DNA from: Macrostomum lignano
Taxonomy: Eukaryota
Direction of reading: 5' to 3'
Length of the DNA stretch: 64,000 nt
Assembly: GCA_002269645.1 (NCBI GenBank)
Contig: NIVC01001939.1
Span: forward strand, 16,460 to 80,459
This document shows positions 9,820 to 60,654 of this stretch, one piece after another; positions within the stretch are counted from its first letter, which is position 1, and the number at the start of each line of letters is the position of its first letter. The notes beneath the pieces are model-generated. The model was not told the DNA's origin and did no database searches. It saw only the letters and a list, made by a program, of their open reading frames with translations. Both the position numbers and the translations under genes were made by a program.

Positions 9820-11223
9820 TACAAGTATAAGATTACATAGAAAAGCTAGTATGCACTTGTACTTTCTTTAACTTTGATTCTTGTCCTGTTTATCTATAAG
9901 CTTATATTTAAGCACAATTCACCACCCCAAATTTCCAACCCACAACCTCTTTAACCCTACCCCTAACCCAGGCTAGCTATGTGTAGTCCTTTATTTTCTA
10001 TCCAGGCCTAAATTATCAATTCATTCACCCTACCTTATATAAAACTGATATTAACCCTATTCCAGACTACCCCCATCCTCCACTAGGGTAGGCCTAGGAT
10101 TGCTAGCTAAATAATGTATGTATTTTCTATGAGGCAATATAGTTTTATTGTATAATAATTTTAATATATAGTTGGATACTCATATATCACTTAGTATCTA
10201 GCGCTTATTTAATATAGCATTTGACTTACTCAACTTGGCTGCAGGGGGCTCCATATATCTAGAAACAGTGAGGAGATGTTGCTACCCATTTTGCTAACCC
10301 TTGGCAACCACAAGCAGCTAGTGCTACAGTGTGGTGCAGGGAGTTCTGATGGTGCCAGTGTCTGCAGTGCAGTCCTCCTCTAGAAAATCCAGGAGGTAGA
10401 TAGTTGCTCACTGGATAGCCTTTAGGTAATGGACGAGCTAGCAGAGATTCCTGGGCCTAAAAATGTAGTGTATATGGCATTTAGTGCATGGTATAATATA
10501 GCTCCCTTAGACCTTAGCAAAGTTTGTTTAGCATTTATTATTTGTTTTGCAATGTTATAAAGAAGATTTATATTTCATAAATAATCCCACCATTGTTATC
10601 AAGTTGTGGTATATTTCTTCTCATTAAGAATTTCCTAATGTTGCTACCAAGTTGTATTAGAATAGTTTTTTTATTGCCCAATGATTTCTCTTTCTAATAT
10701 CCAGATTGGTTTTTGTCTAATTATGATTTCCCATTGACTTAGGCCTAGCTGCAAGGTGATCCAAAGATGCAACGGGTGGAAAATATTGCCTTTTCTGCTA
10801 AAATGACTTCCCATTAGTGGATGATCCAGTTTTAGGCTATCTAATAAATTGGAAATTTTTTCCTTTTGTCTTGGTAAATGACATCTCTCCCCTTTGATTT
10901 TCTACTTTTGGTTTAGACTATTCATCTTCTCATTTTGTATTTCACCTAAAACCAATTTATCTTTGATTCTAACAAATAAGAAAGACTTTTAGCAAAATTC
11001 GCTTAATTTAGTTTTATCAAAAAAAATAGTTTCCTTTGGTTTTGATGGGAGTTCAACTTGAGAGCACATCTTAGTATTAGCATAAAATTTTTATCAATTG
11101 ACCTCTTCTATAGGATAGGTTATCTATTGGACTACAACCTCTCTAGTCTATATATGGCCCTTTGATAATAATATTGCCCTCATGCTTTAGAAAGTGACCC
11201 TTGGGCGTGTTTGTGCTGATATT

Positions 11224-11447: not shown

Positions 11448-14400
11448 AATGACCCATCTGCTCTGCTTCTGGTGGCCACCACAGTTCAACTCTTAGTGCT
11501 GGGCGATGCGGGTCGCAGTCCCAGAATGCAGTTGCACGCATTGAGCTTTGCCGAGTCTGGCTATCACGTGACCCTGCTAGGTTATTCTGGTTCTCCATGC
11601 CGCTCCGCTGTGGCCAATCACCGGCTGATTAAGGTTGAGCACATCCGGCAGGCTCCCGCTTGGCTTGATCGTCTGCCAACAGTTCTAGCTCAGCCGTTGA
11701 AGCTTCTGGCTCTGCTGGTGCTGCTGTGCTGCAGCCTGTTGGCGCACCCGCGCTCCGACCTGCTGCTGGTGCAGTCGCCGCCAGCTGTGCCCGCCCTGCT
11801 TGTGGCCTGGGCCACCTGCCGGCTGGGTCGGCGTCGGCTTATTGTTGATTGGCACAACTATGGATGGACTCTGGCCAGGTATGCAGTTTATGCTGTTACT
11901 GGGTCCAAACATTCACAGACTCGAAACATTCACAGACTCGAAGCTTCACAAGCTCGAAGCCTCACAGACTCGGAACTTCACAAGCTCGAAGCCTCACAGA
12001 CTCGAAGTTTCACAAGCTCGAAGCCTCACAGACTCGAAGTTTCACAAGCTCGAAGCCTCACAGACTCGAAACTTCACAAGCTCGAAGCCTCACAAGCTCG
12101 AAGCTTCACAAGCTCGAAGCCTCATAAACTCGAATCTTCACAAGCTCGAAACTTTACTAAGCTCAAAGCTTCACAAGCTCGAATCTTCACAAACTCGAAG
12201 CTTCACAAGCTCGAAACTTCACAAGCTCGAAGCTTCACAAGCTCGAAACTTCACAAGGTCGAAGCTTCATAAGCTCGAAGCTTTTCTTCACACAAGCTCG
12301 AAGCTTCACAAGCTCGCAGCCTCACAAGCTCAAAGCTTCACAAACTCAAAGCTTCAAAAGCTCGAAACTTCACACAAGCTCAAAGCTTCACAAACTTCAC
12401 AAGCAAAAATTCATAGGTTGTTTGGGATCCAAGTCCCAAACATCAGATCCAAGTCCCAACCATCAGATTCAAATCCCAACCATCAGATCCAAGTCCCAAC
12501 CATCAGATCCAAATCCCAACCATCAGATCCAAGTCCCAATCACCAGATCCAACTCCCAATCACCAGATTCGAATCCCAAACACAAGATCTAAATCCCAAT
12601 CACCAGATTCGAATCCCAGTCTACAGATCCAAATCCCAGTCTACCGATCCAAATCCCAATCTACAGATCCAAATCCCAATCTACAGATCCAAATCCCAAT
12701 CTACAGATCCAAATCCCAATCTACCGATCCAAATCCCAATCTACAGATCAAAATCCCAATCTACAGATCCAAATCCCAATCTACAGATAAAAATCCCAAT
12801 CTACAGATCAAAATCCCAATCTACAGATCCAAATCCCAATCTACCGATCCAAATCCCAATCTACAGATCAAAATCCCAATCTACAGATCCAAATCCCAAT
12901 CTACAGATAAAAATCCCAATCTACAGATCAAAATCCCAATCTACAGATCCAAATCCCAATCTAGCGATCCAAATCCCAATCTACAGATCAAAATCCCAAT
13001 CTACAGATAAAAATCCCAATCTACAGATCAAAATCCCAATCTACAGATCCAAATCCCAATCTACAGATAAAAATCCCAATCTACAGATCAAAATCCCAAT
13101 CTACAGATCCAAATCCCAATCTACCGATCCAAATCCCAATCTACAGATCAAAATCCCAATCTACAGATCCAAATCCCAATCTACAGATAAAAATCCCAAT
13201 CTACAGATCAAAATCCCAATCTACAGATCCAAATCCCAGTCTACAGATCCAAATCCCAATCTACAGATCCAAATCCCAGTTCACCAATCCAAATCCCAGT
13301 CTACAGATCCAAATCCCAATCTACAGATCCAAATCCCAATCTACAGATCCAAATCCCAGTCTACCGATCAAAATCTCAATCTGCAGATCCAAATCCCCAA
13401 GTACCTAGTCCAAATCCTAAACCCAGTGCTTATGCGCTTACGTGTCCATTTGTCCCTTCGTGCAGAGCCGGCAGATCAATCTACCGCAGCCTCGAGCTCG
13501 GGTTCGCCTCAAGATTTCTCCGCTCGGACACTCACCTGTGCGTCACCGAGGCGATGCGCCGCGACCTGCGCAAAAGCTGGGGCATCGACGCCGTGGCCTT
13601 CCACGACAGGCCCAGCCCGGACTTCGCCGTGCGCGCCAGCGACAATCCGGACGCCACCGCGGCGCATCGCCTATTCGACCGGCTGGGAGCTCCTGGCGGC
13701 CCCGTGCCGCAGCTGGCGGAGACGCCGCTGACTCGGCTGGGCGTTGACGGCGTCGCCCGCTACCTGCCGATTTGCGAGCGGCCAGCTCTGCTGGTCTCCA
13801 GCACCAGCTGGACTCTTGACGAAGACTTCGCTCCGCTGATGGAGGCTTTGGATAGGTGAGGTGCTGCTGCCCTGCCGCCTAGGTGACGCCTGTCCTAGAG
13901 GCCAGATGCGCAACGGACAGCTTAACCGCAGCTATTGCGCGGCGCATCTGAAGGCTGGGGGGACCAAGGACGGGGGGGTCGCCACACACAGCCTTAATTA
14001 CCCCAGCTAATGCTGGCACCCATTTTACAGCTGGGTGAACTGAAGCAATGCAGAGTTGAGTGTCTGGCTCAAGGACACAAATTGTTCCTAGTGGATCGGG
14101 AATCGAACCCCCGACCTTCAAGTCGTTAGTCCGACGCTCTAACCGCTACTATCACTCACTAGGCCACAACCCCTCACTAGACCACAACCCTCACTAGGCC
14201 ACAACCCTCACTAGGCCACAACCCTCACTAGGCCACAACCCTCACTAGGCCACAACCCCTCACTAGGCCACAACCCTCACTAAGCCACAACCCCTCACTA
14301 GGCCACAAACCTCACTAGGCCACAACCCTCACTAGGCCACAACCCCTCACTAGGCCACAACCCTCACTAAGCCACAACCCCTCACTAGGCCACAACCCTC

Positions 14401-16732: not shown

Positions 16733-17977
16733 CCGGTTGTAACAAAAGTTTCGAGCGTTTTCTTTAAACTTCTAGAACTTTCTCCAGAGAAATTTCTGGA
16801 ATGTTCTATGTGGGTATATAAGAGTGACCAGTGCGCACTACTATCCATATGGATTATGCTCAACCTTCAACTACAATGGCTACGCAACAACACAATCAAC
16901 GTCACCTCATTCGAGCATCTTTACTTTTCTGCTTCAAGCTGGGCGACTCAGCAGCTGAGGCGCATCGCAAGTTATGTCAGGCATATGGCGAGGACTGTCT
17001 GAGTGAGCAACGCTGCCTTGCCTGGTTCGCGCAGTTCAAGAAGGGTGACGAATCACTCAAAGACAAGGAGCGCTCTGTTCGCCCACCTGAGCTCGATATT
17101 CAGCAGCTTGCCCTGCTTGTCGAAAGTGAGCCACATCTCACAACACGTGAAATGGCACAGTACTTCAAGGTCTCTGCCATGACCATCGACCGCGGCCTTC
17201 ATCAGATCGGCAAAGTACACAAGCTTGGTCGATGGGTTCCACACGAACTTTCACCTGAGAACAAAAATTAGCGCATCATCACATGCACCCAACTCCTGTC
17301 CTATCGTCGCAACCCAGAATGGCTCGATACCCTGGTGACTGGCGATGAGTAGTGGGTGGCCTACTTCAACATCACACGCAAGCGCCAGTGGCTTGGCATG
17401 GGTGATCAGCCACAGCCAATGCGCAAACCTGATCCACACCAAAAGAAGGTCATGCTGTGGTCTGGTGGAATACCAGTAGAATTTTCCACTGGGAGCTTCT
17501 GCCTCGTAACACCAGCATCACTGCCGATGTCTACTGTGAGCAGCTGGATAGACTGCACCAGGCTATTGCCAAGCAGCAGGGCGCTGGCGCAAAAATTCGA
17601 TTTCTTCAAGACAACGCCCGACCTCACGTGGCGAAGAAGACACTACAGAAGCTGCTCGAGCTGGGCTGGGAAGTCATGCCCTACCCTCCATACTCGCCTG
17701 ATCTTGCGCCATCAGACTACCACCTGTTCTGCTCAATGCAGAACCACAAATGGTGTGACGTTAAAAGACGAGGAGGAGGTGAAAGCCTGGCTTAAGCAAT
17801 ACTTCAAGTCGCTGTCACCTGAATTCTTTAAGAAGGGCATCCACAATCTCATCGCCAGATGGCAACAGGTCATCGATCAGGATGGTGATTATATCCTGGA
17901 ATAGAAACTGTGATGGAACTGGAAAATGAGTTCAAGGTTTGAGTACAAAAACGCTCGAAACTTTTGTTACAACCCAA
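16733..17977 (+). mobile_element. Second mariner element, inactive
   Basis: TIR GGTTGTAACAAAAGTTTCGAGCGTTTT at both ends. Outermost bases and TA duplication are degenerate. Confidence 0.9.
16849..17904 (+). pseudogene. Mariner DD34D transposase pseudogene
   Basis: WVPHEL, VTGDE*W, FLQDNARPH, YSPDLAPSDYHLF, GDY motifs. Two TAG stops and two frameshifts. CpGs largely retained. Confidence 0.95.
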
Positions 17978-18389: not shown

Positions 18390-19200
18390 GTTCAAAACAG
18401 CTGCAGTTTTGAACTTAGCAGAATTCAAAACTGTACAGTTCTGAGCTGAGCAGAATTCAAAACAGTGTAGTTTTGAGCTGAGCAGAATTAAAAGCAACTG
18501 CAGTTTCGAGCTGAGCAGAATTCAAAGCAACTGCAGTTTTGAGCTGAGCAGATTTCAAAGCAACTGCAGTTCTGAGCTGCAGTTTTGAGCTGAGCAGAGT
18601 TCAAAGCAACTGCAGTTTTGAGCTGAGCAGAATTCAAAGCAACTGCAGTTTTGAGCTGAGCAGAGTTCAAAGCAACTGCAGCTTTGAGCTGAGCAGAATT
18701 CAAAGCAACTGCAGCTTTGAGCTGAGCAGAATTCAAAGCAACTGCAGTTCTGAGCTGAGCAGAGTTCAAAGCAACTGCAGTTTTGAGCTGAGCAGAATTC
18801 AAAGCAACTGCAGCTTTGAGCTGAGCAGAATTCAAAGCAACTGCAGCTTTGAGCTGAGCGGAGTTCAAAGCAACTGCAGTTCTGAGCTGAGCAGAATTCA
18901 AAGCAACTGCAGTTCTGAGCTGAGCAGAATTCAAAACAACTGCAGTTTTGAGCTGAGCGGAGTTCAAAGCAACTGCAGCTTTGAGCTGAGCAGAATTCAA
19001 AGCAACTGCAGTTTTGAGCTGAGCAGAGTTCAAAGCAACTGCAGCTTTGAGCTGAGCAGAATTCAAAGCAACTGCAGTTCTGAGCTGAGCAGAATTCAAA
19101 GCAACTGCAGCTTTGAGCTGAGCAGAATTCAAAGCAACTGCAGCTTTGAGCTGAGCGGAGTTCAAAGCAACTGCAGTTCTGAGCTGAGCGGAGTTCAAAG
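18390..19200. repeat. 33-bp minisatellite (TTCAAAGCAACTGCAGTTTTGAGCTGAGCAGAA)n
   Basis: Direct reading, ~24 units. Confidence 0.95.
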
Positions 19201-19783
19201 CACTCTGAATGTCTGAATACTCGTATATTGTACGTGACTTCCCGTACTTGACTGAACAAAATTGTTGAGTTAACAAAAATCGCAGTTAGTATGAACTGCA
19301 ATGTTTGCTCTCAGTTCTGCCCTTCTTGTCTACCTTGTGCCTCTATGCATAGGACTTGCAGTAAGGGCTGAACAAAGCTCTGCTTAGTCGGGTGTGGATT
19401 CCTCAATATTCTCGATTTCTCTTCTAAAGCTCGGGTGTCACTCACGGAAAATTCTCCAACAGCAGCCAGGAGCCCTCAGCGAGGCTAAAGTGTTGCAAAT
19501 TGTTGCTTCAAAATTCTTCTCGTTGGCGCTTTGCCTCTTCTTCAATTTCCTAGCATAAGCTTGTGCACTTTACTTTGCACTTTTAATGGATACTTCTCTC
19601 TGTTCGCTCCCACTGGATGCCCTTTCTTGCTCGTTCTCAGCCGAAAATTGAACTTGATATTGCTTCCGGCATGCAGCTGTACGTCTTGACTTAACTTGAC
19701 TTAGCTGCAGGGCTGTCCCGGAGGGGACACAGCGGGAAGGCGCGGGCGCCCATTCCGCTAGTCCCTGAACGGCCGACGCGTCG

Positions 19784-22700
19784 CTATGGACGGAGGGTTG
19801 GCGCCGCCCAGGGAGGTCCCCCAGTGTCGCCAGCAGCTATGGTGCTCTCTGGAAAGGAGAGTTCAGCCCTGCGGGTGGCCCGAAGGTAGCGCATGAGCTG
19901 ATTAAAGTTTTCGGGTTTGCACGCTTCAGTAATAGATGTGTGTGGCCCGAGGTAAGTGAGTCTGGCCCGCGTGAAGGCGGGACAGATGCTGACGAAATGC
20001 TCAGCGGTTTCGTCACCTGAGTTGCAGAAACTACAGGTGGCGTTGGTGGCGTTGCCCTGCAGGTACTGGTGCCTGGAGAAGCAGCCGTGACCAGAGAGGG
20101 TCATGGCAGCCCGGATGTCTCTGCGCGAGAGGCGCAAGAGGAGCTTCCGGAGCTGGTGAGAGGGCTGAGGGACAGCGCCTCTGGATTGCCTGCAGTTCGT
20201 GCGGTTCGCCCAAGTCGAGCGGTGCTGAGTCCTGATCCACGCTTTGATGCGCGAGTCGATGACACAGCCAGGAATCGGGACAAGAGGTTCGGGGCCGAGA
20301 GAGGAGCCGGAGGCACCAACTTTTGCAAGGGTGTCAGCCAACTCATTTCCTCGGATCCCCACATGCCCCGGAACCCACTTAAGGGTAATTTTGTTGGCGG
20401 AACCCAACACGTTGAGGAGTTTGATACAGTCGAGGACTGTAGCAGAGTTGGTGCTGCAGCCACTGATGGCGTGCAAGGCAGCTTGGCTGTCCGAATGGAA
20501 AATGATGTTCTTACCAGTAACGCCAGTGGCGAGAAGCTCTGCAGTGCAGGAGCTGATGGCCAGAACTTCATTTTGGAAAACACTGGAGTTGACCCCAGTG
20601 TATTGAGCGTGGGTAGCAATGACCCTCTCGTTCAGAAAGATTCCAACACCAAAGCCGGTGTTGGCTGACTGCTTAGAACCGTCGGTGTAGCAATGAAGCT
20701 CACCAGGGTTCCATTGGTCATTGATGTTATCGCGCGAGTCGATAGCTACGGAGTAGCGCTGTCTCAGGTTGAGCGTTGAGGCAATGCCATCGGTGAAGAC
20801 GCGATTGGCCTGACACTCGTTGAGAAAGTTGAGGCACAGATCGCTATGCGGGACAAGGTTCCGCTTAGCAGGTGCTCTCATGTAAATGAATTTGACGCCG
20901 GCATCAATTAGACGCCGCGTCGTTCTAGCCGCCTCACCCCTGATGAAGAGGTCAAGAGGCGGAAGATTAAGGAAGGCCCCCATGCCAGCAAAGGGCATGG
21001 ACCTGGTGGCGTTGCAGATGAGCCTACACGCTCTGCCTTGGATCGTGTTGAGCAGGTCTGCATGGCTTTTGACCTGGGTAGCGCTAACCCAGACAACAGA
21101 GGCGTACGTAATGGCAGGTCTAACTACGGAAGTATAGATCCACCAAAGCCGCTTTGGGGATAGACCCCAAGAAGTGCCAAGTGCTCGTCGGAGCTGGGCC
21201 AGGATGGCTGAGGCACGCTTGGCTTTTGCTTTCACGTGGGAGGACCAGTTGAACCGGTGGTCAAGTATGACCCCGAGACATCTGGTCTGGTGCGCGAAGG
21301 CAATATCTCTGCCGTAGAGCTGCAGAGGACGTATGTTCCAGCGTAGTCTGCTGGTAAACATAATGGCAACGGTTTTGGGCTCAGAGAGTTCCAGACCATT
21401 GTCATTGGCCCAAGATTCTGCTTTGCGGATAAAGCTCTGCATCAGATCCCTGAGCGTGCTGGGAGACGGTCCTGCCACAATGGCCGTGACGTCATCAGCA
21501 TACCCGACTTTGAAGACGGGGTCGGGTCGGGAGTCACTCAAAAGAGCGTCCATGACCAGGTTCCAGAGCGTCGGGGTGAGGACTCCGCCTTGGGGTCCAC
21601 CCTTACAGACTCTGGTGGAGGCAGTTTGCCCAAGAAGTTGGGCAGTGACCGTACGGTTGGAGATCATGTACATGGTCCACCGTATGAGGGTAGCATGAGC
21701 TTTGCGATTTTGAAGGGCCCTCTGAAACGCTTCAAAGATAACGTTGTCGAAGGCGCCAACAATGTCAAGAAAGAGAGCCAGAGCGTAACCGTCACCCAGT
21801 ACCGCCCTTTCAATCTTCTCGACAATCGCATGCAGGGCGCTGTCAGTCGACCTCCCGGTACGGAAGGCGTGCTGATTATTGCTGAGGGGCATCGCTGTCA
21901 GCTCGCAGGACAGCAGCCGCCAGAGAATAAGCCTCTCAGTGAGCTTAAGCATTGCTGACGTTAAGCTAATAGGCCGGAAGGCCTTGACGCTTTGGTAGTC
22001 ACCCTTCCCAGGTTTGGGAATAAAGACTACCCGAGCTTCAGTCCAGCATTTGGGAACGTATCCCAGCTGGATAGAGGCCCGCATATGATTGCGGGTGAGT
22101 CTCAGGAACGAGGGTATCTTGGCTGCTTCACGAAGGAGAACAGGGTAGATACCATCAGGTCCAGGAGATTTGAAGGGTTTGAAGGTTCTGACCGCACGAG
22201 CGATTAGGTCTTCAGTGACAATGCCCGCCGCTAGGGTGGCTCCATCCATCGAATGGTTGGGCTCTGGTCTAGCAGTAGGTACCCTCGGGAAGAATGTGCT
22301 AAGCATATGCTGAAGCACTTCTTCAGGGTCTTTAGTAAGAGAGCCATCATCTTTTTTGATCATGGCTAATTTGGACATTTTGTCCATTGTAAGGGCCTTG
22401 ACAAGCCTAGAAGTAGGTCTGTCTTGATCCAATTCATTGCAGAATTGGCGCCACTTACATTCCTTGGCCTTGCGCACTTCAGATTTGAAATTGCGGGAGG
22501 CTTGCCGGAAAAGCTCCATGTCCTCCGGGTTTCCGGTCTTCATGGCACGGCGATGAAGGCTTTTGGCCTTCCGCCTGAGTTTCCCCAGCTCCGGGTTCCA
22601 CCACGGCGCCGAGGTCTTGCCTTTGTAGGCGCGAGCAGGACAAGCCGCTTCGTAGGCTTCAATAATGCAACCTGTCAGCGTCTCAGCCATATGATCCACA

Positions 22701-23895
22701 TCCTAGCAGGTCTCAATCGGACGTAAGTCCGTGAGTTCCTGCAGGTGCAGATCAAGGGCAGCCTTGTAGGCCGCCCAATCAGTGTTGCGGATATTGCGTC
22801 TCCAAGTGATCGGAGACTGGGTTTTAGTGTCCGCGATGTTAAAGGCGATAAAGCAGTGGTCAGACAGGGAGGGCTCCTCAGACCAGACTCTCCACTCCTC
22901 AACTCTGTCAAAGAGTCTTGGGGTAACGAGTGTGGCGTCGAGGACCTCGGTCCATCTGCCATTATTAAAGGTAGGAGTGCTGCCGCGGTTGCAGAGCATG
23001 AGGTTTGTGTTAGAGATGAGGGCCAGAAGCTCCTCTCCTCTAGTGTTGGTATCTTTGCTGCCCCAGTGCTTGTGGTGCGCGTTGAGGTCGCCCCCTAAGC
23101 ACAGCTCAGCGTTCTGGGACTCGCAGTACTGCGCAAGGCGCAGTAAACTCTCGGGAGCAGGGTCTCTGTCGCCTGGGATATAAACCGAGGCAACAAGACA
23201 CGTACGCGGAGAGAAATGATTAGATTGGATGACGCAAAGGTCTCCATCAGAGAGATCAGTCCTCAGCCAAGCCTGGAGATGACGGGGGCCGTAGCCCAGC
23301 GGTAGCGCAGCTGCTCTGGTGTGCCGCGACCCAGGCTCGATTCCAAGTGCAGCCACTTTATTTTGGGGCTGGATTGGAATATAGGCTTGGCTCGCTTGTG
23401 CAATTAACGGCCTTGAGAGCCAACCCCCCAAGGCGCAGTGAAGTGTACATGCCTAACAATTGATAAAGTTAGGGCCGCTGTACACTCCTGTGTGAGTGTG
23501 TGCCTGCGTAACGTATCCGCGCGCTTGTATGCCTGCTCAGGGGAGTCGGCGGAATGGGCAGTAATGCCTCTCGCCGGTTGTGTGCCAATGACGCTTAAAT
23601 TGTGCCAGGGTGCACACAACCCCCCTGCCTCTAATAAAATAAAAGCCTGGAGATGGCTAGCAGCGAGGATAGCCGCTCTAGGGCGGCTGTTCCCCGGGCC
23701 ACACACATAAAAATCAGAGTAGCCAGAGGGAATGTTGGGCAACTTACCGTTGCGCATCCAGGGTTCCTGGATCAGGATGAGGCCTGGCCTGTACAGCTCA
23801 GCAATCTTCATCAGATTTACTGACGCAGATACGCAATGCTGTAAATTAATTTGCAGACAGAATGTCGCTCCTTTGGCAGCGTGGAGCTTAGTCAT
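19784..23895 (-). pseudogene. LINE ORF2: APE endonuclease, reverse transcriptase, RNase H and C-terminal Cys/His motif; broken by one SINE insertion and one TAG
   Basis: QINLQH, LIQEPW, GGDLNAH, SDHCFI (APE); FRPISLTS, LDIVGAFD, PQGGVLTP, YADD, LGVILD (RT); YTDGSK, QNEVLAI, SDSQAAL, WVPGHVGIRGNELAD (RNase H); CSFC...ETAEHF...C. Removing 374 bp (SINE plus one TSD) rejoins ...ASHLQAWLRTD... in frame. TAG at 22703-22705. Confidence 0.93.
23284..23644 (+). mobile_element. tRNA-headed SINE family 2, copy 1 (inside the LINE endonuclease)
   Basis: A-box TAGCCCAGCGG, B-box-like GCTCGATTCC, tail CTAATAAAATAAAA. 13-bp TSD GCCTGGAGATG(A/G)C at 23271-23283 and 23645-23657. Other copies at 50763 and 51823. 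Confidence 0.9.
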
Positions 23896-23918
23896 ACTGT
23901 ATTAAATGCAATTTCTGG

Positions 23919-24545
23919 CTAGAGCCCAGGGCCATCAAGGAGACTTGGACAACAGATCGTCCTCGTCCCAGGCCGCTGGGGCTTGACTGGGAGATGGGAG
24001 TTGGTCGACGTCCATGGCCTCCTCACCCCCACCGCCCCCCCCCCAGCAGAGTCCTCAGGCTCCGATGACAGGATGGAGGAAGCTTCCTCACCTGCATCTG
24101 CAGACCCCACCAGGGTGGCCGAGGAGAGCTCGGATTCCGAAGACCCGGCCTCGTCCTCAACTCCTTCTCCGACTGACAGGTTTGGTTCCCGGGGCCTGCC
24201 TTTTGGCGCGTTGTTTAGAGCGTTTGCGCTCAAGCCGAGCCCGCTGAGCTTCATCGGATCTGCCAGATTTGGCCGGTCCTTTAGGCTCAGAGCTCGCGGT
24301 TTGCTTAGATCCACCAGCGGAGCTGGCAGGTCTTTGGGTATTATGAGTTTGGTAGCTGTGGTCGGATCTGCCAGCAGAGCCAGCCGGTCCTTCCTTTGCC
24401 ACAGTTGAATCAGTCGGTTGGGATCTGCCAGCAGGGCCGGCCGGTCCTTCGGACTGAGGTTGGGGTTTAGAAGGGTCCCCGTCCCTAGAAAAAGCTTTGT
24501 TATCCATAATCGGCTCGAAGGCCATGATAAAAGGTTGGTGGGCTA
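23919..24545 (-). pseudogene. Short ORF1-like region of the LINE (frameshifted, low complexity)
   Basis: Lies directly upstream of ORF2. Basic and acidic low-complexity stretches and three GPA..GRS repeats. No zinc knuckle seen. Confidence 0.45.
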
Positions 24546-25087
24546 CCCTCAAAGGGGCGCGGTATCCACCCGGCCGCTCCACCTGACCGGGCAGTAGGCC
24601 AATAGCACCCTCAAGGCTGGCCCGACACCAGGAGGGGGACCGCTTGCGACCGGACTACTCCCCGGCCTTCCAGCCCATCGGCACGGTCAACACCTTAGGC
24701 ATTAGAGAGTACGTTGAGCAGTACCACGGCCTGCAGGTTGGCGAGCCAGACCCGCATACCCAAATTCGGCCGAAGCCACTGGATAGGGTCGCCAGCGCCG
24801 GAGCCCAGTCTGTCCAGCAGCCCTAGGGACTGCCTTGAACACACGCGGGGACGAGTACCCTGGGTCGACTTGCGAGACAGCGTGGGGGGGGGGGGTCTGC
24901 GGCTGCCAGAGGCAAATAGCGGGTGCAGACCTCCCACCAGCCTTGACCTGCTGAAGATAGGGGCAGGCGTGAAGCATCGCAGACCTTAGCCCATGGGCCT
25001 AGTCTGTCTCATACTTCACTGGCATGCTGAATACGCCTTCGCGTGCAGCTGTACGTCACTCTCACTCTTTTAACTGTTCCATTCTTC

Positions 25088-25790
25088 CTAAACTCTCCTA
25101 TTCTTCCCTAATCTCCCTCTCCTATCCTTCCCCAATCTCCCTCTCCTATTCTTCCCCTAATCTCCCTCTCCTATTCTTCCCCAGTCACCCTCTCCTATTC
25201 TTCCCCAGTCACCCTCTCCTATTCTTCCCCAGTCACCCTCTCCTATTCTTTCCCGAATCTCCCTCTCCTATTCTTCCCCAATCTCCCTCTCCTATTCTTC
25301 CCCAATCTCCCTCTCCTATCCTTCCCCAATCTCCCTCTCCTATCCTTCCCCAATCTCCCTCTCCTATTCTTCCCCAATCTCCCTCTCCTATCCTTCCCCA
25401 ATCACCCTCTCCTATTCTTTCCCGAATCTCCCTCTCCTATTCTTCCCCAATCTCCCTCTCCTATTCTTCCCCAATCTCCCTCTCCTATCCTTCCCCAATC
25501 TCCCTCTCCTATCCTTCCCCAATCTCCCTCTCCTATTCTTCCCCTAATCTCCCTCTCCTATTCTTCCCCTAATCTCTCTCTCCTATTCTTCCCCAATCTC
25601 CCTCTCCTATTCTTCCCCTAATCTCCCTCTCCTATTCTTCCCCAATCTCCCTCTCCTATCCTTCCCCAATCTCCCTCTCCTATCCTTCCCCAATCTCCCT
25701 CTCCTATTCTTCCCCAATCTCCTTCTCCTATTCTTCCCCTATCTGTCCTGTTCTTCCCCATTCTCACTCTCCTATTCTTTCCCAATCTTC
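25088..25790. repeat. 24-bp pyrimidine-rich minisatellite (TCTCCCTCTCCTATTCTTCCCCAA)n
   Basis: Direct reading. Confidence 0.95.
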
Positions 25791-26599
25791 CTCTCATGTT
25801 CTTCCCAAATCTCTTATCATTCTCTTTGTTATCACCATAGCTAGATTTTGTAGTTTCAATCGACTAACTCAAGACCTTCGCCTTTTTGCTCATGAGGAAT
25901 CTCTCCTCATAGCGACAGCAAGCGATCCCTGAAGATTTGTGACAGGACTCCCAGTCTAATTCCAGGATTTGCAGTATTAGTTGGGACTTTTTCCAACTTT
26001 TTCCAGTCGTTAATACCCAGCAGTTTTCAGTAAATAGAGAAGACTAAGAGAGATTTCGAATTCAGGGAAAAACTCAAGGGAAGAGAGAAGGGATTAGAAA
26101 AGCAAATAATGTTTTGCGGCATGATTTCTGCCATCTGCCGCGGCTTGCGGGGCTAATCCCCTCTGCTCTAGTGGCAGAATCTCTCGCACGCTAATCCCCC
26201 TCTAAGTCCCCCTTTTCCCTCATCCCCTCCCCATCATGCGGAATCCTCAGCCGAGAGGAATCCCAGGCTCGGCCGGTTCCCCATCACGGTAAGTTGTAAA
26301 AATCCCCACAGTCCCCAGCAGCGCACCTCTGCTGAGCTGTCCGATCCCAGCCCCTGCACTCTTCCCCCTAGTGTAATTGGCCTCATCAGCGCTCCAGCCA
26401 TTGCCTGCAGTCGTCCGCGTACTGCTGCTCCCTGTGCCCCCCCCACCCCTCTCTCCCTCTCACTGCCGTCCCCTTAAAACCGGCAAAAAATTGTCCCATC
26501 CAATCCCAGTCCGCCTCAGCTGCTGCGGTGATTAAAACAGAACTATTTTACAGGGAGGGAGACAGAGTTGAGAGACAAAGGAAATAAATCAAGAGAGCC

Positions 26600-40272
<13,673 letters not shown>

Positions 40273-46510: not shown

Positions 46511-53208
<6,698 letters not shown>

Positions 53209-53460: not shown

Positions 53461-53914
53461 TACTCCAACTCGATTTTAAACACCACAATTTCGATCTACG
53501 AGTAAATTGATTGGACAGCATCCGGTACACAAAACGCTCGATTTCAGTGCAAAAGCACCGGGAAAGAAAATGTCCTATCAAATGATGAAAGTGTTCCGTC
53601 TGCGGCAGTTAAAAAAGATTTTGCAGGCTGCAGGCTCTTTTAGCGTAATTTGAAGCCACGCAAAACCTGGGTCCCGCCCTAATCTTGATCCCCAGTCTAG
53701 GGGAACTGGAATTGCATACACTCACTGGCCAGAGATATATTTTAAAGACTGGTTCAGCAGATTTCGACTACATTTCCGAAATATTTATACAGACTGTCTA
53801 TTCAGCCTTTGAGACGAGTCATATCGAATTCCAGGTAGCTGGACTGCCTTGCTTAACTGACCGATTTTGTTAAATAAAGAAACAAAAAAAAATTGTTTTT
53901 TTCTACTGAGGGAT

Positions 53915-56900
53915 AGATTAGCAATCCATTCTATTCCTTTATTGATTTAGGCTAGATTAGCAATCCATTCTATTCCTTTATTGATTTAGGCTAGATTAGC
54001 AATCCATTCTATCCCTTTATTAATTTAGGCTAGATTAGCAATCCATTCTATCCCTTTATTGATTTAGGCTAGATTAGCAATCCACTCTATTCCTTCATTG
54101 ATGTAGGCTAGATTAGCAATCCATTCTATTCCTTTATTGATTTAGGCTAGATTAGCAATCCATTCTATTCATTCATTGATGTAGGCTAGATTAGCAATGC
54201 ATTCTATTCCTTCATTGATGTAGGCTAGATTAGCAATCCATTCTATCCCTTTATTGATTTAGGCTAGATTAGCAATCCATTCTATCCCTTTATTGATTTA
54301 GGCTAGATTAGCAATCCATTCTATCCCTTTATTGATTTAGGCTAGATTAGCAATCCATTCTATCCCTTTATTGATTTAGGCTAGATTAGCAATCCATTCT
54401 ATCCCTTTATTGATTTAAGCTAGATTAGCAATCCACCTATTCCTTTATTGATGTAGGCTAGATTAGCAATCCACCTATTCCTTTATTGATGTAGGCTAGA
54501 TTAGCAATGCATTCTATTCCTTTATTGATGTAGGCTAGATTAGCAATCCATTCTATTCCTTCATTGATGTAGGCTAGATTAGCAATCCATTCTATTCCTT
54601 CATTGATGTAGGCTAGATTAGCAATGCATTCTATTCATTCATTAAAGTAGGCTAGATTAGCAATCCATTCTATTCCTTCATTGATGTAGGCTAGATTAGC
54701 AATCCATTCTATTCATTCATTGATGTAGGCTAGATTAGCAATCCATTCTATTCCTTCATTGATGTAGGCTAGATTAGCAATCCATTCTATCCCTTTATTG
54801 ATTTAGGCTAGATTAGCAATCCATTCTATTCCTTCATTGATGTAGGCTAGATTAGCAATCCATTCTATCCCTTTATTGATTTAGGCTAGATTAGTATCCA
54901 TTCTATTCCTTCATTGATGTAGGCTAGATTAGCAATCCATTCTATCCCTTTATTGATTTAGGCTAGATTAGCAATCCATTCTATCCCTTTATTGATGTAG
55001 GCTAGATTAGCAATCCATTCTATCCCTTTATTGATTTAGGCTAGATTGGCAATCCATTCTATCCCTTTATTGATTTAGGCTAGATTAGCAATCCATTCTA
55101 TCCCTTTATTGATTTAGGCTAGATTAGCAATCCATTCTATCCCTTTATTGATTTAGGCTAGATTAGCAATCCATTCTATCCCTTTTTGATTTAGGCTAGA
55201 TTAGCAATCCATTCTATCCCTTTATTGATTTAGGCTAGATTAGCAATGCATTCTATTCCTTTATTGATGTAGGCTAGATTAGCAATCCATTCTATCCCTT
55301 TATTGATTTAGGCTAGATTAGCAATGCATTCTATTCCTTTGTTGATGTAGGCTAGATTAGCAATCCATTCTATCCCTTTATTGATTTAGGCTAGATTAGC
55401 AATCCATTCTATCCCTTTATTGATGTAGGCTAGATTAGCAATCCATTCTATCCCTTTATTGATTTAGGCTAGATTAGCAATCCATTCTATTCGTTCATTG
55501 ATGTAGGCTAGATTAGCAATGCATTCTATTCATTCATTAAAGTAGGCTAGATTAGCAATCCATTCTATCCCTTTATTGATGTAGGCTAGATTAGCAATCC
55601 ATTCTATCCCTTTATTGATTTAGGCTAGATTAGCAATCCATTCTATCCCTTTATTGATGTAGGCTAGATTAGCAATCCATTCTATCCCTTTTTGATTTAG
55701 GCTAGATTAGCAATCCATTCTATTCTTTTATTGATGTAGGCTAGATTAGCAATCCATTCTATTCCTTTATTGATGTAGGCTAGATTAGCAATCCATTCTA
55801 TTCCTTTATTGATGTAGGCTAGATTAGCAATCCATTCTATCCCTTTATTGATTTAGGCTAGATTAGCAATCCATTCTATTCCTTTATTGATGTAGGCTAG
55901 ATTAGCAATCCACCTATTCCTTTATTGATGTAGGCTAGATTAGCAATCCATTCTATCCCTTTATTGATTTAGGCTAGATTAGCAATCCATTCTATTCCTT
56001 TATTGATGTAGGCTAGATTAGCAATCCATTCTATCCCTTTATTGATTTAGGCTAGATTAGCAATCCATTCTATTCCTTTATTGATTTAGGCTAGACTAGC
56101 AATCCATTCTATTCCTTCATTGATGTAGGCTAGATTAGCTATCCATTCTATCCCTTTATTGATGTAGACTAGATTAGTAATCCATTCTATTCCTTCATTG
56201 ATGTAGACTAGATTAGTAATCCATTCTATTCCTTCATTGATTTAGACTAGATTAGCAATCCATTCTATTCCTTCATTGATTTAGACTAGATTAGCAATCC
56301 ATTCTATTCCTTCATTGATGTAGGCTAGATTAGCAATCCATTCTATTCCTTCATTGATGTAGACTAGATTAGCAATCCATTCTATTCCTTCATTGATGTA
56401 GACTAGATTAGCAATCCATTCTATTCCTTCATTGATGTAGACTAGATTAGCAATCCATTCTATTCCTTTATTGATTTAGGCTAGATTAGCAATCCATTCT
56501 ATTCCTTCATTGATGTAGGCTAGATTAGCAATCCATTCTATTCCTTCATTGATGTAGGCTAGATTAGCAATCCACTCTATTCCTTTATTGATTTAGGCTG
56601 GATTAGCAATCCATTCTATCCCTTTATTGATTTAGGCTAGATTAGCAATCCACCTATTCCTTATTGATGTAGACTAGATTAGCAATCCATTCTATTCCTT
56701 CATTGATGTAGGCTAGATTAGCAATTCACTCTATTCCTTCATTGATGTAGGCTAGATTAGCAATTCACTCTATTCCTTCATTGATGTAGGCTAGATTAGC
56801 AATTCACTCTATTCCTTTATTGATGTAGGCTAGATTAGCAATTCACTCTATTCCTTTATTGATGTAGGCTAGATTAGCAATCCATTCTATTCCTTCATTG

Positions 56901-57157
56901 ATGTAGGCTAGATTAGCAATTCACTCTATTCCTTTATTGATGTAGGCTAGATTAGCAATCCATTCTATTCCTTCATTGATGTAGGCTAGATTAGCAATCC
57001 ATTCTATTCCTTCATTGATGTAGGCTAGATTAGCAATTCACTCTATTCCTTTATTGATGTAGGCTAGATTAGCAATTCACTCTATTCCTTTATTGATGTA
57101 GGCTAGATTAGCAATCCATTCTATTCCTTTATTGATGTAGGCTAGATTAGCAATCCA
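53915..57157. repeat. 39-bp minisatellite (TAGGCTAGATTAGCAATCCATTCTATCCCTTTATTGATT)n, ~83 units
   Basis: Direct reading; no unique spacers. Confidence 0.97.
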
Positions 57158-58429
57158 TCGAGTCAGCCCCTTTCGTTCGCTAAAGGGCCTTGAAAAAATT
57201 GATTTGATTCCCTTCCTTGTACAATGATTTTTCAGTTAGCAAAATTTGTTAAAATAAAGCTCAGAACAGGAAAAGTCGCAACAGATTCGCAGCTGCTCAG
57301 TCTGGGAGAACATGGAATTCGCGGTTCAACTCGCGGCCAGCTTCCAATGCCTGCGGCAGAAGGTTGGGGAGCTGGAAAGCCTCCCTGTGATGTCGGAGCC
57401 GCTCATTAGAGATGTTGCACCAGGCTCCAAGCTGTCTAAATATGGAGGCCCGAAGTGTCACATGACTTCCTGGCACCCAGTTCCCTCCTCAGCTTAGAGC
57501 ACAAACCGGTTCCACCGCTGCTGGGAGTTCCGGCGCGGAAGCAGTGAAAGCCAACTATGCCCAGCTTTACTCGCTTCTCATACTTTATAAAAAACTTTCT
57601 ATAGAAAAAAGGTGATGATGGAACGATGCCTGCTTCCCTAGAGTAATCTTCCCCCTTTCCTAAGAGGTTTGTTCAACACATCGCCCCGATCCTCTTCATC
57701 GGGATGCAATTTCTTATCCGATCGTGTTTTGTTCCGCAAGCCTCTCCCAGAGTCTGCATCTCCTGCTCTTTCCTCACTCAGATCCGCTTGGCAAAGCGGG
57801 ACAATTGCATCGCTGAGAGACTACTCATGGAGAATTCATGGTGAATAGCCCTGAGCTGCCGTAATCAGATTTGGAAAGGGTTTAGTCTGCTGTTCAGTAC
57901 ATTTTCTACAAGTGCACACTGCGAGCGGTCTGCGTTTTTTTACTATATGTGTATCTGTGTTTCTCGCGGGAACTTTTCTGCGGCAATTGTTCAGGAAATC
58001 GTGTTAGTGAACAAGAAACAAAAAAGCGATTTTCACTTCAGAGAACGAAGACTCACCTCTTTTAGGTCAATCACTACGACATCCATGAGTTGTCGGTGAA
58101 TAATTTTATGGTGAATATCTTAGAGAGTAGACAGATTAAGCTGAGGTTTCAGTTTGGGAGAATTCTTGTGGGCTTAGGGGGGGATTTTCCTGTCCCGTCG
58201 GGCAATATAAGGCGGATCGGGGGGTTGGAAGGACCGGCGCGTTAATCTGTGGCTCAGCCAATCAGATTGTAGCTCGACTTCTGGCTAAGAAGTGCAGTGA
58301 AAGCTGCTCTGCTGAGGGGGTACATTGAGACAGTCTAGACAGAGGAACTTGAAAGGTGAGAGCGAAAAGAATTAGGTGAATTATTAGATTCTTAGTGCTA
58401 GGGGATTTTTAAATAAGAGGCGGACAGTG

Positions 58430-60190: not shown

Positions 60191-60654
60191 TGCAATGACA
60201 GAGAGAAGCCTCTATAGGCCCTTCACTGTCCTGCTGTCTCTTCCCCTTCGAAGCGACCATTGCACGCAGTTTCAAAGTCTACGCTCGTAGTAGGAATGAT
60301 GATATAAAGGGCCATACTAATTACGCATCTCCCTGTCACAATAATTATTTCGCTGCTTTGCAATCAACAGGTTCTGCATTGTTTTGGAGCAGTTCAGAAG
60401 AGTTCGGACAGTTTCAAGACAACAGACTTTTCTACGAGCCACATGTTGGAGAGCCGTTTAATCATCGGCGGTAAAGCATCGGGTATGCTGTCCAGCGCTT
60501 GAAGACAGGTGCAATCTAAGTTGCACCTGTAAGTAAAGCAAAGTTCAAGGCCACTGCATGCGAAGAAAGAGAAGCGAGGGACAGCAAGAGAGTCAGAGAG
60601 AGTGAGAACGAGACTGATATGGAGTGAGAAGGAGAGTAATGTGGAGCTAGACTG

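What the first reader, a model, noticed from the sequence alone, without database searches (positions are those of the whole stretch)
19686..23657. A SINE shares its 3' stem-loops with the LINE it has inserted into (candidate SINE-LINE partnership)
Seen: the LINE 3' UTR (minus strand) reads CAGGGACTA-GCGGAATGGGC-gcccgc-GCCTTCCCGC-TGTGTCCC-ctcc-GGGACAGC-CCTGC-agCTAA. The SINE 3' end reads CAGGGGAGTCG-GCGGAATGGGC-agtaat-GCCTCTCGC-cggtTGTGTGCC-loop-GGGTGCACACAAC-ccc-CCTGC-ctCTAA. They share an exact 11-mer (19748-19758; 23549-23559; 51030-51040; 52116-52126), a 6-nt loop of equal length, a second hairpin and the closing CAGG/CCTG pairing, with loops divergent. Copy 1 disrupts the endonuclease of this LINE, with a 13-bp TSD. 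Established: stringent-type SINEs take their 3' end from the LINE whose RT mobilises them. Inference: this SINE is mobilised by this RNase H-bearing Loa/R1/I-like family or a sister family, and the conserved fold is the RT-recognition element. The tails differ (poly-A versus AAGTC-like), which favours a sister family.
Basis: partly seen in the sequence, partly recalled or inferred. Interest (0 to 1): 0.8.

Follow-up and report, generated by a model that had tools for sequence, protein, structure and literature searches.

The report
Flatworm SINE carries a LINE-type tail
A short parasitic repeat (SINE) in what is probably the flatworm Macrostomum lignano ends in the same folded RNA module found in the 3' ends of one clade of LINE retrotransposons. 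It therefore probably borrows a LINE enzyme of that clade to copy itself, a well-known arrangement seen here in a new host, and the LINE it sits in is not shown to be its helper.

Summary
The minus-strand LINE (19686-25043; APE endonuclease, RT, RNase H) and SINE copies 1 and 2 share a Y-shaped 3' module. It has an outer stem CAGGG(G)/CCC(C)TG, hairpin H1 (4-bp stem, AAU internal loop, 5-bp stem starting with G.U) and a variable hairpin H2. Copy 3 keeps the 11-mer but has lost part of the module.

Plain sequence similarity is weak: BLAST finds nothing, and about 67% of some 60 alignable nt are identical.

The module is nonetheless a conserved, covarying 3' UTR element of this LINE clade. I found it in about 25 external relatives with 30-58% ORF2 identity, including the rotifer relative Seison. 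Covariance models trained only on external LINE tails rank the SINE tails just behind the two LINE tails (third and fourth with the near-relative model). E is 0.3-0.8 over the window and 0.004 within the SINE.

The resident LINE is no closer to the SINE tail (67%) than foreign relatives are (67-72%). Its tail (AAGTCA-like) and H1 loop also differ from the SINE's. The likely partner is therefore a sister family, and M. lignano proteins indicate at least three families of this clade.

This is a new member of a known kind (stringent-type SINE-LINE tail sharing). Mobilisation itself is inferred, not shown.

The parts
19672..19685 (.). Target-site duplication of the LINE (TGCAGCTGTACGTC); the second copy is at 25044-25057
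   Evidence: Exact 14-bp repeat flanking the element
19686..19707 (-). LINE 3' tail, CAGCTAAGTCAAGTTAAGTCAA (AAGTCA-like short repeats)
   Evidence: Sequence. The same tail type occurs in relatives L001 and L084
19708..19767 (-). LINE 3' UTR three-helix module. Outer stem CAGGG/CCCTG. H1 at 19732-19758: GCGG-AAU-GGGCG-CCCG-CGCCU-UC-CCGC. H2 at 19714-19729.
   Evidence: MFE fold, z = -2.7. Scores 25.8 and 37.1 bits with models trained only on external LINEs, E = 6.7e-5 and 8e-7
19784..22699 (-). ORF2, RT and RNase H part with a C-terminal Cys/His motif; an in-frame TAG at 22700-22702 separates it from the endonuclease part
   Evidence: Pfam RVT_1 3.8e-27 and RNase_H 5.5e-11; ORF list
22703..23895 (-). 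ORF2 endonuclease (APE) part, interrupted by SINE copy 1
   Evidence: Pfam Exo_endo_phos_2 4.9e-22; the frame is restored by excising the SINE and one duplicate
23282..23643 (+). SINE copy 1, with duplication AGCCTGGAGATG at 23270-23281 and 23644-23655. A-box-like motif at 23292-23302 and B-box-like motif at 23334-23344.
23538..23627 (+). SINE copy 1 LINE-type 3' module. Outer stem CAGGGG/CCCCUG. H1 at 23549-23574: GCGG-AAU-GGGCA-GUAA-UGCCU-C-UCGC. H2 at 23577-23620. An A-rich tail follows at 23628-23643.
   Evidence: MFE fold, z = -5.0. CM hits of 11.0 and 13.2 bits; E = 0.004 within the SINE
23896..25043 (-). LINE 5' region with a short or degenerate ORF1 (stops in all frames); the copy is probably 5'-truncated
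   Evidence: Translations; compare L001, which has a 525-aa ORF1
50763..51160 (+). SINE copy 2 (93% identical to copy 1), with duplication GACAYAGCAAAA. Its 3' module is at 51019-51143, with H1 at 51030-51055 (loop GCAA) and a short-repeat expansion in the H2 loop.
51825..52199 (+). SINE copy 3 (84% identical to copy 1). It keeps the 11-mer (52116-52126) but has lost the 3' strand of H1 and the 5' strand of H2. Its duplication GGGTTTGA(C/A)TTGG is imperfect.
10239..10308 (-). Decayed, 5'-truncated copy of a related LINE 3' end: CAAGGGTTAGCAAAATGGG...CCCCCTGCAGCCAAGTTGAGTAAGTCAAA
   Evidence: CM hits of 16.5, 15.7 and 13.9 bits; sequence

Best explanation
**Claim.** The last ~105 nt of the SINE are a LINE-derived tail domain. 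They fold into the Y-shaped module that ends the mRNAs of one clade of LINEs carrying an APE endonuclease, RT and RNase H: an outer stem, hairpin H1 with an A(A/U)U internal loop and a G.U pair, and a variable hairpin H2.

**Proposed mechanism.** In the LINE, ORF2p would bind this module on its own transcript and start target-primed reverse transcription at the short-repeat or A-rich tail just downstream. The SINE transcript presents the same module, so an ORF2p of this clade copies it in trans. This gives 12-13-bp duplications, close to the LINE's 14 bp.

**Which LINE.** The LINE that copy 1 landed in belongs to this clade but is probably not the donor or driver. A sister family with an A-rich tail is more likely.

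**Shown:** the shared architecture, conservation and covariation of the module among LINEs, the clean SINE insertion and the duplication lengths.

**Inferred:** RT binding, trans-mobilisation and the identity of the partner.
For: - **LINE identity:** Domains and duplications are.
- **Module in relatives:** The same module lies directly after the ORF2 stop in external relatives.
  - L001 has 58% amino-acid identity, an identical GCGGAATGGGC and the tail CAGCTAAGTCAA.
  - L002 and L003 have 45% identity and poly(A) tails.
  - Many relatives at 30-38% identity carry microsatellite tails.
  - Seison nebaliae also has it.
- **Covariation among LINEs:**
  - H1: 92.4% of cells paired, 7 of 9 pairs with compensatory changes, 0 of 500 shuffles as high.
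  - Whole structure: 92.2% paired, 10 of 17 pairs compensatory, 0 of 500 shuffles as high.
- **Folds:** Independent MFE folds give the same Y shape for the LINEs and for SINE copies 1 and 2. SINE copy 1 has z = -5.0.
- **SINE keeps the base pairs:**
  - The fifth pair of the upper stem is A-U in the SINE, G-C in the resident LINE and L001, and C-G in most other relatives.
  - G.U and AAU are kept.
  - The one H2 difference between copies 1 and 2 turns U-A into U.G.
- **Model searches:** CMs trained without any window sequence find, in order, the LINE tail, the decayed LINE tail, then the SINE tails with the near-relative model. One probably chance hit precedes the SINE tails with the broader model. 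E = 0.004 within the SINE.
- **Descriptor:** 3 hits in the window, 0 in 300 shuffled windows, and only LINE 3' UTRs in 472 kb of loci.
- **Precedent:**
  - Stringent LINE ORF2 proteins bind the stem-loop of their own 3' tail (PMC4176376).
  - An internal loop in the tail hairpin of UnaL2 is required for retrotransposition (PMC1636434).
  - SINE tails matching Nimb (I-superfamily) LINEs are reported in bivalves (PMC11481361).
Against: - Primary-sequence similarity is weak.
  - blastn finds no link between the tails.
  - About 67% identity over roughly 60 alignable nt.
  - A lenient alignment ranks the LINE tail only 8th of 4199 windows.
- Window-wide CM E-values for the SINE are 0.3-0.8. The full-length model gives 10.2 bits, E = 5.3.
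- The tails differ, and so do the H1 loops (GUAA against CCCG). In L2-clade LINEs the loop confers specificity (PMC4176376).
- Only three SINE copies and one intact LINE tail were available from this genome.
- No M. lignano LINE with a closer tail could be retrieved.
- The SINE head is not recognised as a tRNA.
Confidence: 0.6

Rival explanations
1. The resident LINE family itself (AAGTCA-tailed, 19686-25043) is the SINE's donor and driver. On this view the tail and loop differences are tolerated by its RT.
For: - It shares the exact 11-mer forming the 5' half of H1, and TGTGT at the start of H2.
- Both elements look young. ORF2 has a single stop apart from the SINE insertion, and M. lignano proteins are 96-98% identical to it. 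SINE copies 1 and 2 are 93% identical.
- Duplication lengths are similar, 14 against 12-13 bp.
Against: - It is no closer to the SINE tail than foreign relatives are: 67% against 67-72%.
- The 3' half of H1 and the closing strand match L003 instead.
- The terminal repeats differ. From my knowledge of stringent LINEs such as UnaL2, these repeats matter for initiation.
- The H1 loops differ, and loop-specific recognition is reported for L2-clade LINEs (PMC4176376).
Confidence: 0.2
2. The resemblance is chance or convergence between G+C-rich hairpins. The SINE would then be copied through its A-rich tail by an unrelated, relaxed (L1-like) LINE.
For: - Window-wide CM E-values are 0.3-0.8.
- blastn is negative.
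- A generic alignment is not unique.
- The SINE tail is A-rich and contains AATAAA.
Against: - The match lies exactly where the hypothesis predicts: the 3' end, on the sense strand, abutting the tail.
- All three helices are in the same order, with the conserved AAU loop and G.U pair, and the outer stem closes just before the tail.
- The descriptor gives 0 hits in 300 shuffled windows.
- E = 0.004 in the search space specified in advance.
- No L1-like LINE is present in the window.
Confidence: 0.13
3. The tail module is a relic. It was captured from a LINE of this clade when the SINE arose, but it is no longer what the current mobilising enzyme recognises.
For: Copy 3 has lost part of H1 and H2, and copy 2 carries a repeat expansion in the H2 loop.
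Against: - Those changes may have happened after insertion.
- Copies 1 and 2 keep every helix, and their differences preserve pairing.
Confidence: 0.07

Closest known systems
Stringent-type SINE-LINE pairs of the L2 clade (eel UnaSINE1/UnaL2; zebrafish ZfL2-1 and ZfL2-2)
   Same: The SINE and LINE share a 3' tail that folds into a stem with an internal loop. The tail is followed by short terminal repeats. The cognate ORF2p binds the stem-loop (PMC1636434, PMC4176376).
   Different: - This LINE carries RNase H, which L2-clade LINEs, to my knowledge, do not.
- The module has three helices rather than one hairpin.
- The SINE's and LINE's terminal repeats do not match.
- Nothing has been tested experimentally here.
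Bivalve Meta and V SINEs with tails matching Nimb (I-superfamily) LINEs
   Same: These are tRNA-related SINEs whose 3' ends match LINEs of the I superfamily. Reported tail homologies span 35-61 bp at 72-95% identity (PMC11481361; see also PMC4758252).
   Different: - The host here is a flatworm.
- Identity is lower, about 67-72% in the alignable blocks.
- I could not establish whether this LINE belongs to Nimb.
- I did not check the SINE body for a known conserved central domain.
3' UTR stem-loop requirements of R1-clade elements (SART1, R1Bm)
   Same: Structured 3' UTR elements are needed for the RT to start correctly.
   Different: Those elements are target-specific and have no known SINE partner. 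Sequence relatedness was not tested.

Membership tests
Stringent-type SINE-LINE partnership (tail sharing) | The SINE's 3' region is homologous to the 3' UTR of a LINE in the same genome | tested here: met
   Same three-helix module. External-only CMs rank the SINE tails just behind the LINE tails; E = 0.004 within the SINE and 0.3-0.8 window-wide. The descriptor gives 0 hits in 300 shuffles. Caveat: primary-sequence identity is only about 67%, and blastn is negative.
Stringent-type SINE-LINE partnership (tail sharing) | Same terminal repeat or tail in the SINE and its partner LINE | tested here: not met
   The LINE ends CAGCTAAGTCAAGTTAAGTCAA. The SINE ends CCTCTAATAAAATAAA or CCTCTAATAAAAAAAAT. 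This applies to the resident LINE only; relatives with poly(A) tails exist.
Stringent-type SINE-LINE partnership (tail sharing) | Similar target-site duplication length | tested here: met
   LINE 14 bp; SINE 12-13 bp in three copies.
Stringent-type SINE-LINE partnership (tail sharing) | Trans-mobilisation of the SINE by the LINE's ORF2p, and genome-wide co-amplification | not testable with these tools
   Only 64 kb of this genome is available, and no assay is possible.
SINE (Pol III-transcribed, tRNA-derived head) | tRNA-related 5' head with A and B boxes | tested here: inconclusive
   TAGCCCAGCGG and GGCTCGATTCC each match the box consensus as I recall it (TRGCNNAGTGG, GGTTCGANNCC) at 10 of 11 positions, 42 nt apart. 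ARAGORN finds no tRNA, and the Rfam tRNA model does not match even at E <= 10.
RNase H-bearing non-LTR retrotransposons (I group: I, Nimb, Loa, R1, Tad1, Ingi) | APE endonuclease, RT, then RNase H in ORF2, with a C-terminal Cys/His motif | tested here: met
   Pfam Exo_endo_phos_2, RVT_1 and RNase_H. C889, C892, H901 and C906 are invariant in 19 relatives.
RNase H-bearing non-LTR retrotransposons (I group: I, Nimb, Loa, R1, Tad1, Ingi) | Placement inside a named clade by RT phylogeny with reference elements | not tested
   No reference clade sequences were available. PDB holds only distant R2 and L1 proteins.
I / Loa / R1 clades specifically | ORF1 with CCHC zinc knuckles (a feature I recall for these clades) | tested here: not met
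   The ORF1 of L001 (525 aa) and the partial ORF1 of L003 contain no C-x2-C-x(3-5)-H-x(3-6)-C motif. The resident copy's ORF1 is degenerate.
Any Rfam family | Match to a curated RNA model | tested here: not met
   No match at gathering thresholds in the window. Nothing relevant at E <= 1 over 19600-25100.

The most novel reading that the evidence does not exclude
The Y-shaped 3' UTR module (outer GGGG/CCCC stem, H1 with an A(A/U)U internal loop and a conserved G.U pair, a free-varying H2, then an interchangeable microsatellite or poly(A) tail) may be an uncatalogued RNA recognition element. It would span phyla within one RNase H-bearing LINE clade: flatworm, Seison and many unidentified hosts in metagenomes. 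The flatworm SINE would then show that the module can be captured whole and joined to a different tail, which suggests that module recognition and tail priming are separable steps.
Probability: 0.4. Interest if true: 0.55.

Novelty: new member of a known kind. Interest (0 to 1): 0.4.

Why it matters
- **For this genome:** It would give Macrostomum lignano, a regeneration and germline model rich in repeats, its first proposed SINE-LINE pairing. I found no paper describing one.
- **For LINE biology:** The external comparison shows that an RNase H-bearing LINE clade keeps a covarying three-helix 3' UTR module over 30-58% ORF2 identity while its terminal repeats change freely. That offers a compact, testable candidate for how these reverse transcriptases choose their template. 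It also offers a search model for finding their non-autonomous passengers in other genomes.
- **In principle:** It is not surprising, because tail sharing between SINEs and stringent LINEs is textbook.

Tried and rejected
- **Sequence-only comparisons:** blastn of the SINE against the LINE found no link between the tails. Strict and lenient Smith-Waterman against shuffles and against all windows gave only marginal results.
- **Full-length model R1:** Built from a MAFFT alignment, it penalised the SINE's long H2 and gave only 10.2 bits. I therefore modelled the outer 5' strand plus H1 alone (R2, R3).
- **Rfam and ARAGORN:** Neither found anything for the module or the SINE head.
- **R2 hit at 17379-17438 (E = 0.039):** It looks coding-like and lacks the upper stem, so I set it aside as probably chance.
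- **Retrieving M. lignano DNA for sister families:** P0010 is not on record. P0001's contig has no DNA held.
- **External scans:** The SINE-specific 26-mer of H1 gave no hit in genome contigs or viral contigs. The ORF2 protein scan of viral contigs also gave none.
- **Literature string search for the motifs:** It returned only unrelated primer sequences.
- **Clade assignment:** PDB and cluster names were uninformative.
- **Other LINEs in the window:** I considered that the window might hold a different LINE that matches the SINE better. tblastn and the ORF lists show no other LINE ORF.
Full report
**What is at the locus**

The minus strand of 19686-25043 is a non-LTR retrotransposon flanked by a 14-bp target-site duplication, TGCAGCTGTACGTC (19672-85 and 25044-57).
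- ORF2 encodes an APE-type endonuclease (Exo_endo_phos_2, 4.9e-22), a reverse transcriptase (RVT_1, 3.8e-27) and RNase H (5.5e-11).
- An in-frame TAG lies at 22700-22702.
- The region upstream of ORF2 has stops in all frames. It is about 1 kb shorter than in the closest full-length relative, so the copy is probably 5'-truncated.
- Protein hits of 96-98% identity over parts of ORF2 come from Macrostomum lignano. The window is therefore probably from that flatworm or a very close relative.

Three copies of a ~360-400-bp SINE lie on the plus strand. Copies 2 and 3 are 93% and 84% identical to copy 1.

| Copy | Span | Target-site duplication |
|---|---|---|
| 1 | 23282-23643 | 12 bp, exact |
| 2 | 50763-51160 | 12 bp, one mismatch |
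| 3 | 51825-52199 | ~13 bp, imperfect |

- Excising copy 1 and one copy of AGCCTGGAGATG restores an open endonuclease frame, so this is a clean insertion into the LINE.
- The SINE head carries A-box-like and B-box-like motifs. Neither ARAGORN nor the Rfam tRNA model recognises it as a tRNA.

**Checking the observation**

Plain sequence similarity is weak.
- blastn does not link the two tails.
- Strict local alignment recovers only the 11-mer, and 37 of 2000 shuffles reach that score.
- With gap-tolerant scoring the LINE tail ranks 8th of 4199 windows.
- My own estimate is that one shared 11-mer between a 370-nt and a 5-kb sequence is expected about once by chance. It becomes unusual only because both copies sit in the last 100 nt on the sense strand.

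**Evidence from relatives**

I retrieved contigs encoding relatives of ORF2 from public assemblies and metagenomes. Right after the ORF2 stop, about 25 of them carry the same arrangement:
- an outer stem, (C)AGGGG...CCCC(U)G;
- hairpin H1, with a 4-bp lower stem, a 3-nt internal loop A(A/U)U (less often UCU, UAU or ACU), a 5-bp upper stem that begins with G.U, and a 4-11-nt loop;
- a variable hairpin H2;
- then a tail.

| Relative | ORF2 identity to resident LINE | Notable features |
|---|---|---|
| L001 | 58% | Identical GCGGAATGGGC; tail CAGCTAAGTCAA |
| L084 | 44% | AAGTCA tail; H1 sequence changed on both strands |
| L002, L003 | 45% | Poly(A) tails |
| L085-L087 | 42-45% | (ATG)n tails |
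| More distant loci | 30-38% | (AAGGT)n, (AGAAG)n, (CAAT)n, (AAG)n and other tails |
| Seison nebaliae | 37% | Same architecture; (AGA)n tail |

Covariation supports the fold.
- H1, 22 sequences: 92.4% of cells pair, 7 of 9 pairs show compensatory changes, and no shuffle of 500 reaches the observed values.
- Whole structure, 15 sequences: 92.2% pair, 10 of 17 pairs are compensatory, and again 0 of 500 shuffles reach the observed values.
- No Rfam family matches.

**Does the SINE carry this module?**

MFE folding, run separately on each sequence, gives the same Y shape for the resident LINE, for six relatives, and for SINE copies 1 and 2.

| Sequence | MFE z-score |
|---|---|
| Resident LINE | -2.7 |
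| L001 | -3.2 |
| SINE copy 1 | -5.0 |
| SINE copy 2 | -0.7 (its H2 loop holds a repeat expansion) |

- The SINE's H1 reads GCGG-AAU-GGGCA-GUAA-UGCCU-C-UCGC.
- It keeps the AAU loop and the G.U pair.
- Its fifth upper pair is A-U. The resident LINE and L001 have G-C there, and most other relatives have C-G, so pairing is maintained by a double change.

Covariance models trained only on external LINE tails gave these results in the window with filters off.

| Target | R2 (16 sequences) | R3 (6 nearest) |
|---|---|---|
| Resident LINE tail | 25.8 bits, E = 6.7e-5 | 37.1 bits, E = 8e-7 |
| Decayed LINE tail at 10.2 kb | 15.7 bits, E = 0.037 | 13.9 bits, E = 0.2 |
| SINE copies 1 and 2 | 11.0 and 10.8 bits, E = 0.7-0.8 | 13.2 bits, E = 0.3 |

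- With R2, one probably chance hit at 17379-17438 (E = 0.039) ranks ahead of the SINE copies.
- Restricted to the SINE itself, which is the search space the hypothesis fixes in advance, R2 gives E = 0.004.
- A structure-aware H1 descriptor hits only the LINE and SINE copies 1 and 2 in the window. It hits nothing in 300 block-shuffled windows. In 472 kb of LINE loci it hits only LINE 3' UTRs. I wrote it after seeing the SINE, so it is supporting evidence only.
- The closing strand of the outer stem is not part of R2 or R3. It lies just before the SINE's tail, as in the LINEs.

I put the probability that the SINE tail derives from a LINE of this clade at about 0.8.

**Which LINE?**

Over the alignable blocks the SINE tail is no closer to the resident LINE than to foreign relatives.

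| LINE tail | Identity to SINE tail |
|---|---|
| Resident LINE | 67% |
| L001 | 68% |
| L002 | 67% |
| L003 | 72% |

- The 5' half of the SINE's H1 equals the resident LINE and L001.
- The 3' half (GCCUCUCGC) and the closing strand (CCCCCCUGC) equal L003, which has a poly(A) tail.
- The H1 loops differ (GUAA or GCAA against CCCG), and so do the tails.
- In L2-clade LINEs the cognate ORF2p reads the stem generally and the loop specifically (PMC4176376). If the same holds here, the resident family is a poor candidate.
- M. lignano proteins fall into at least three families of this clade: the resident one, one 68% identical to L001's ORF2, and one 60% identical to the (ATG)n-tailed group.

An unsampled sister family is therefore plausible. 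I could not retrieve M. lignano DNA to test this.

**Mechanism proposed**

- *Shown:* the architecture, its conservation and covariation among LINEs, the clean SINE insertion, and similar duplication lengths (12-14 bp).
- *Inferred from work on stringent LINEs (PMC1636434, PMC4176376):* ORF2p binds the module, most likely H1 with its conserved internal loop and G.U pair. It then primes reverse transcription on the tail at a staggered nick, and the SINE transcript competes for the same protein in trans.

**Comparison with what is known**

- Tail sharing between SINEs and stringent LINEs is well established.
- SINE tails matching I-superfamily (Nimb) LINEs are reported in bivalves, with 35-61 bp at 72-95% identity (PMC11481361, PMC4758252).
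- This case is therefore a new member of a known kind, in a flatworm, and with lower identity.
- The clade name stays open. RNase H and the C-terminal Cys/His motif place the LINE among the RNase H-bearing (I-group) LINEs. The ORF1 of the closest full-length relative has no CCHC knuckles, and no reference phylogeny could be run.

**Verdict**

A shared, selected fold is supported. Sister-family partnership is plausible. Mobilisation is untested.
- The interest is moderate. The more notable by-product is the clade-wide, covarying three-helix 3' UTR module with freely exchangeable tails, which Rfam does not hold.

Noticed in passing
window 10239-10460 (-): A decayed, 5'-truncated copy of a related LINE 3' end in AT-rich surroundings. 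It reads CAAGGGTTAGCAAAATGGG...CCCCCTGCAGCCAAGTTGAGTAAGTCAAA. GCGG has become GCAA, which is consistent with CpG decay. All three models found it.
   Followed up: partly
window 11900-63999 (for example 12426-13397, 25093-25813, 36918-38126, 53914-57158, 60642-62764): The window holds more than 25 different minisatellite and microsatellite arrays (periods 4-39 bp, up to 3.2 kb each). Together they make up a large share of the sequence. The LINE is flanked by two of them (18391-19202 and 25093-25813).
   Followed up: no
window 51066-51127: SINE copy 2 carries a short-repeat expansion (GCCTGTCGCC-like units) inside the loop of hairpin H2. The stems are kept, but the fold z-score drops to -0.7.
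   Followed up: partly
window 51966-51986 and 52127-52165: SINE copy 3 has an expanded poly-C tract in its body. It also has a deletion or replacement that removes the 3' strand of H1 and the 5' strand of H2. Its head differs from copies 1 and 2 (GTGGTCTAGAGCGGCTCTCTCATG), so it may belong to another subfamily.
   Followed up: no
window 23282-23360: The SINE head has A-box-like and B-box-like motifs, but ARAGORN and the Rfam tRNA model do not recognise it even at E <= 10. Its origin (tRNA or another Pol III gene) is unsettled, and the ~180-nt body was not compared with known conserved SINE central domains.
   Followed up: partly
window 17379-17438 (-): Model R2 scored 15.6 bits here (E = 0.039): GCGCATTG...GGCGC inside what looks like a degraded coding sequence. 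It lacks the upper stem and is probably chance.
   Followed up: partly
L051 7780-7850: A second tail-like element (GTGGATGCACAATAAGCC...GTGC...ATCCAC, then CTATTCTA) lies 1.8 kb downstream of that contig's LINE and has the same tail repeat. It may be a truncated copy or a SINE of that unknown host.
   Followed up: no
P0078, and many JGI hits named 'ribonuclease HI': Eukaryotic LINE ORF2 proteins of this clade are deposited as bacterial. One sits in a 'Gammaproteobacteria bacterium' MAG. This points to eukaryotic contamination or mis-binning in metagenome assemblies.
   Followed up: no
P0007: An M. lignano gene model annotated as an ABC-transporter protein is 98% identical to about a third of this LINE's ORF2. 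That gene model probably fuses a LINE fragment to a host gene.
   Followed up: no
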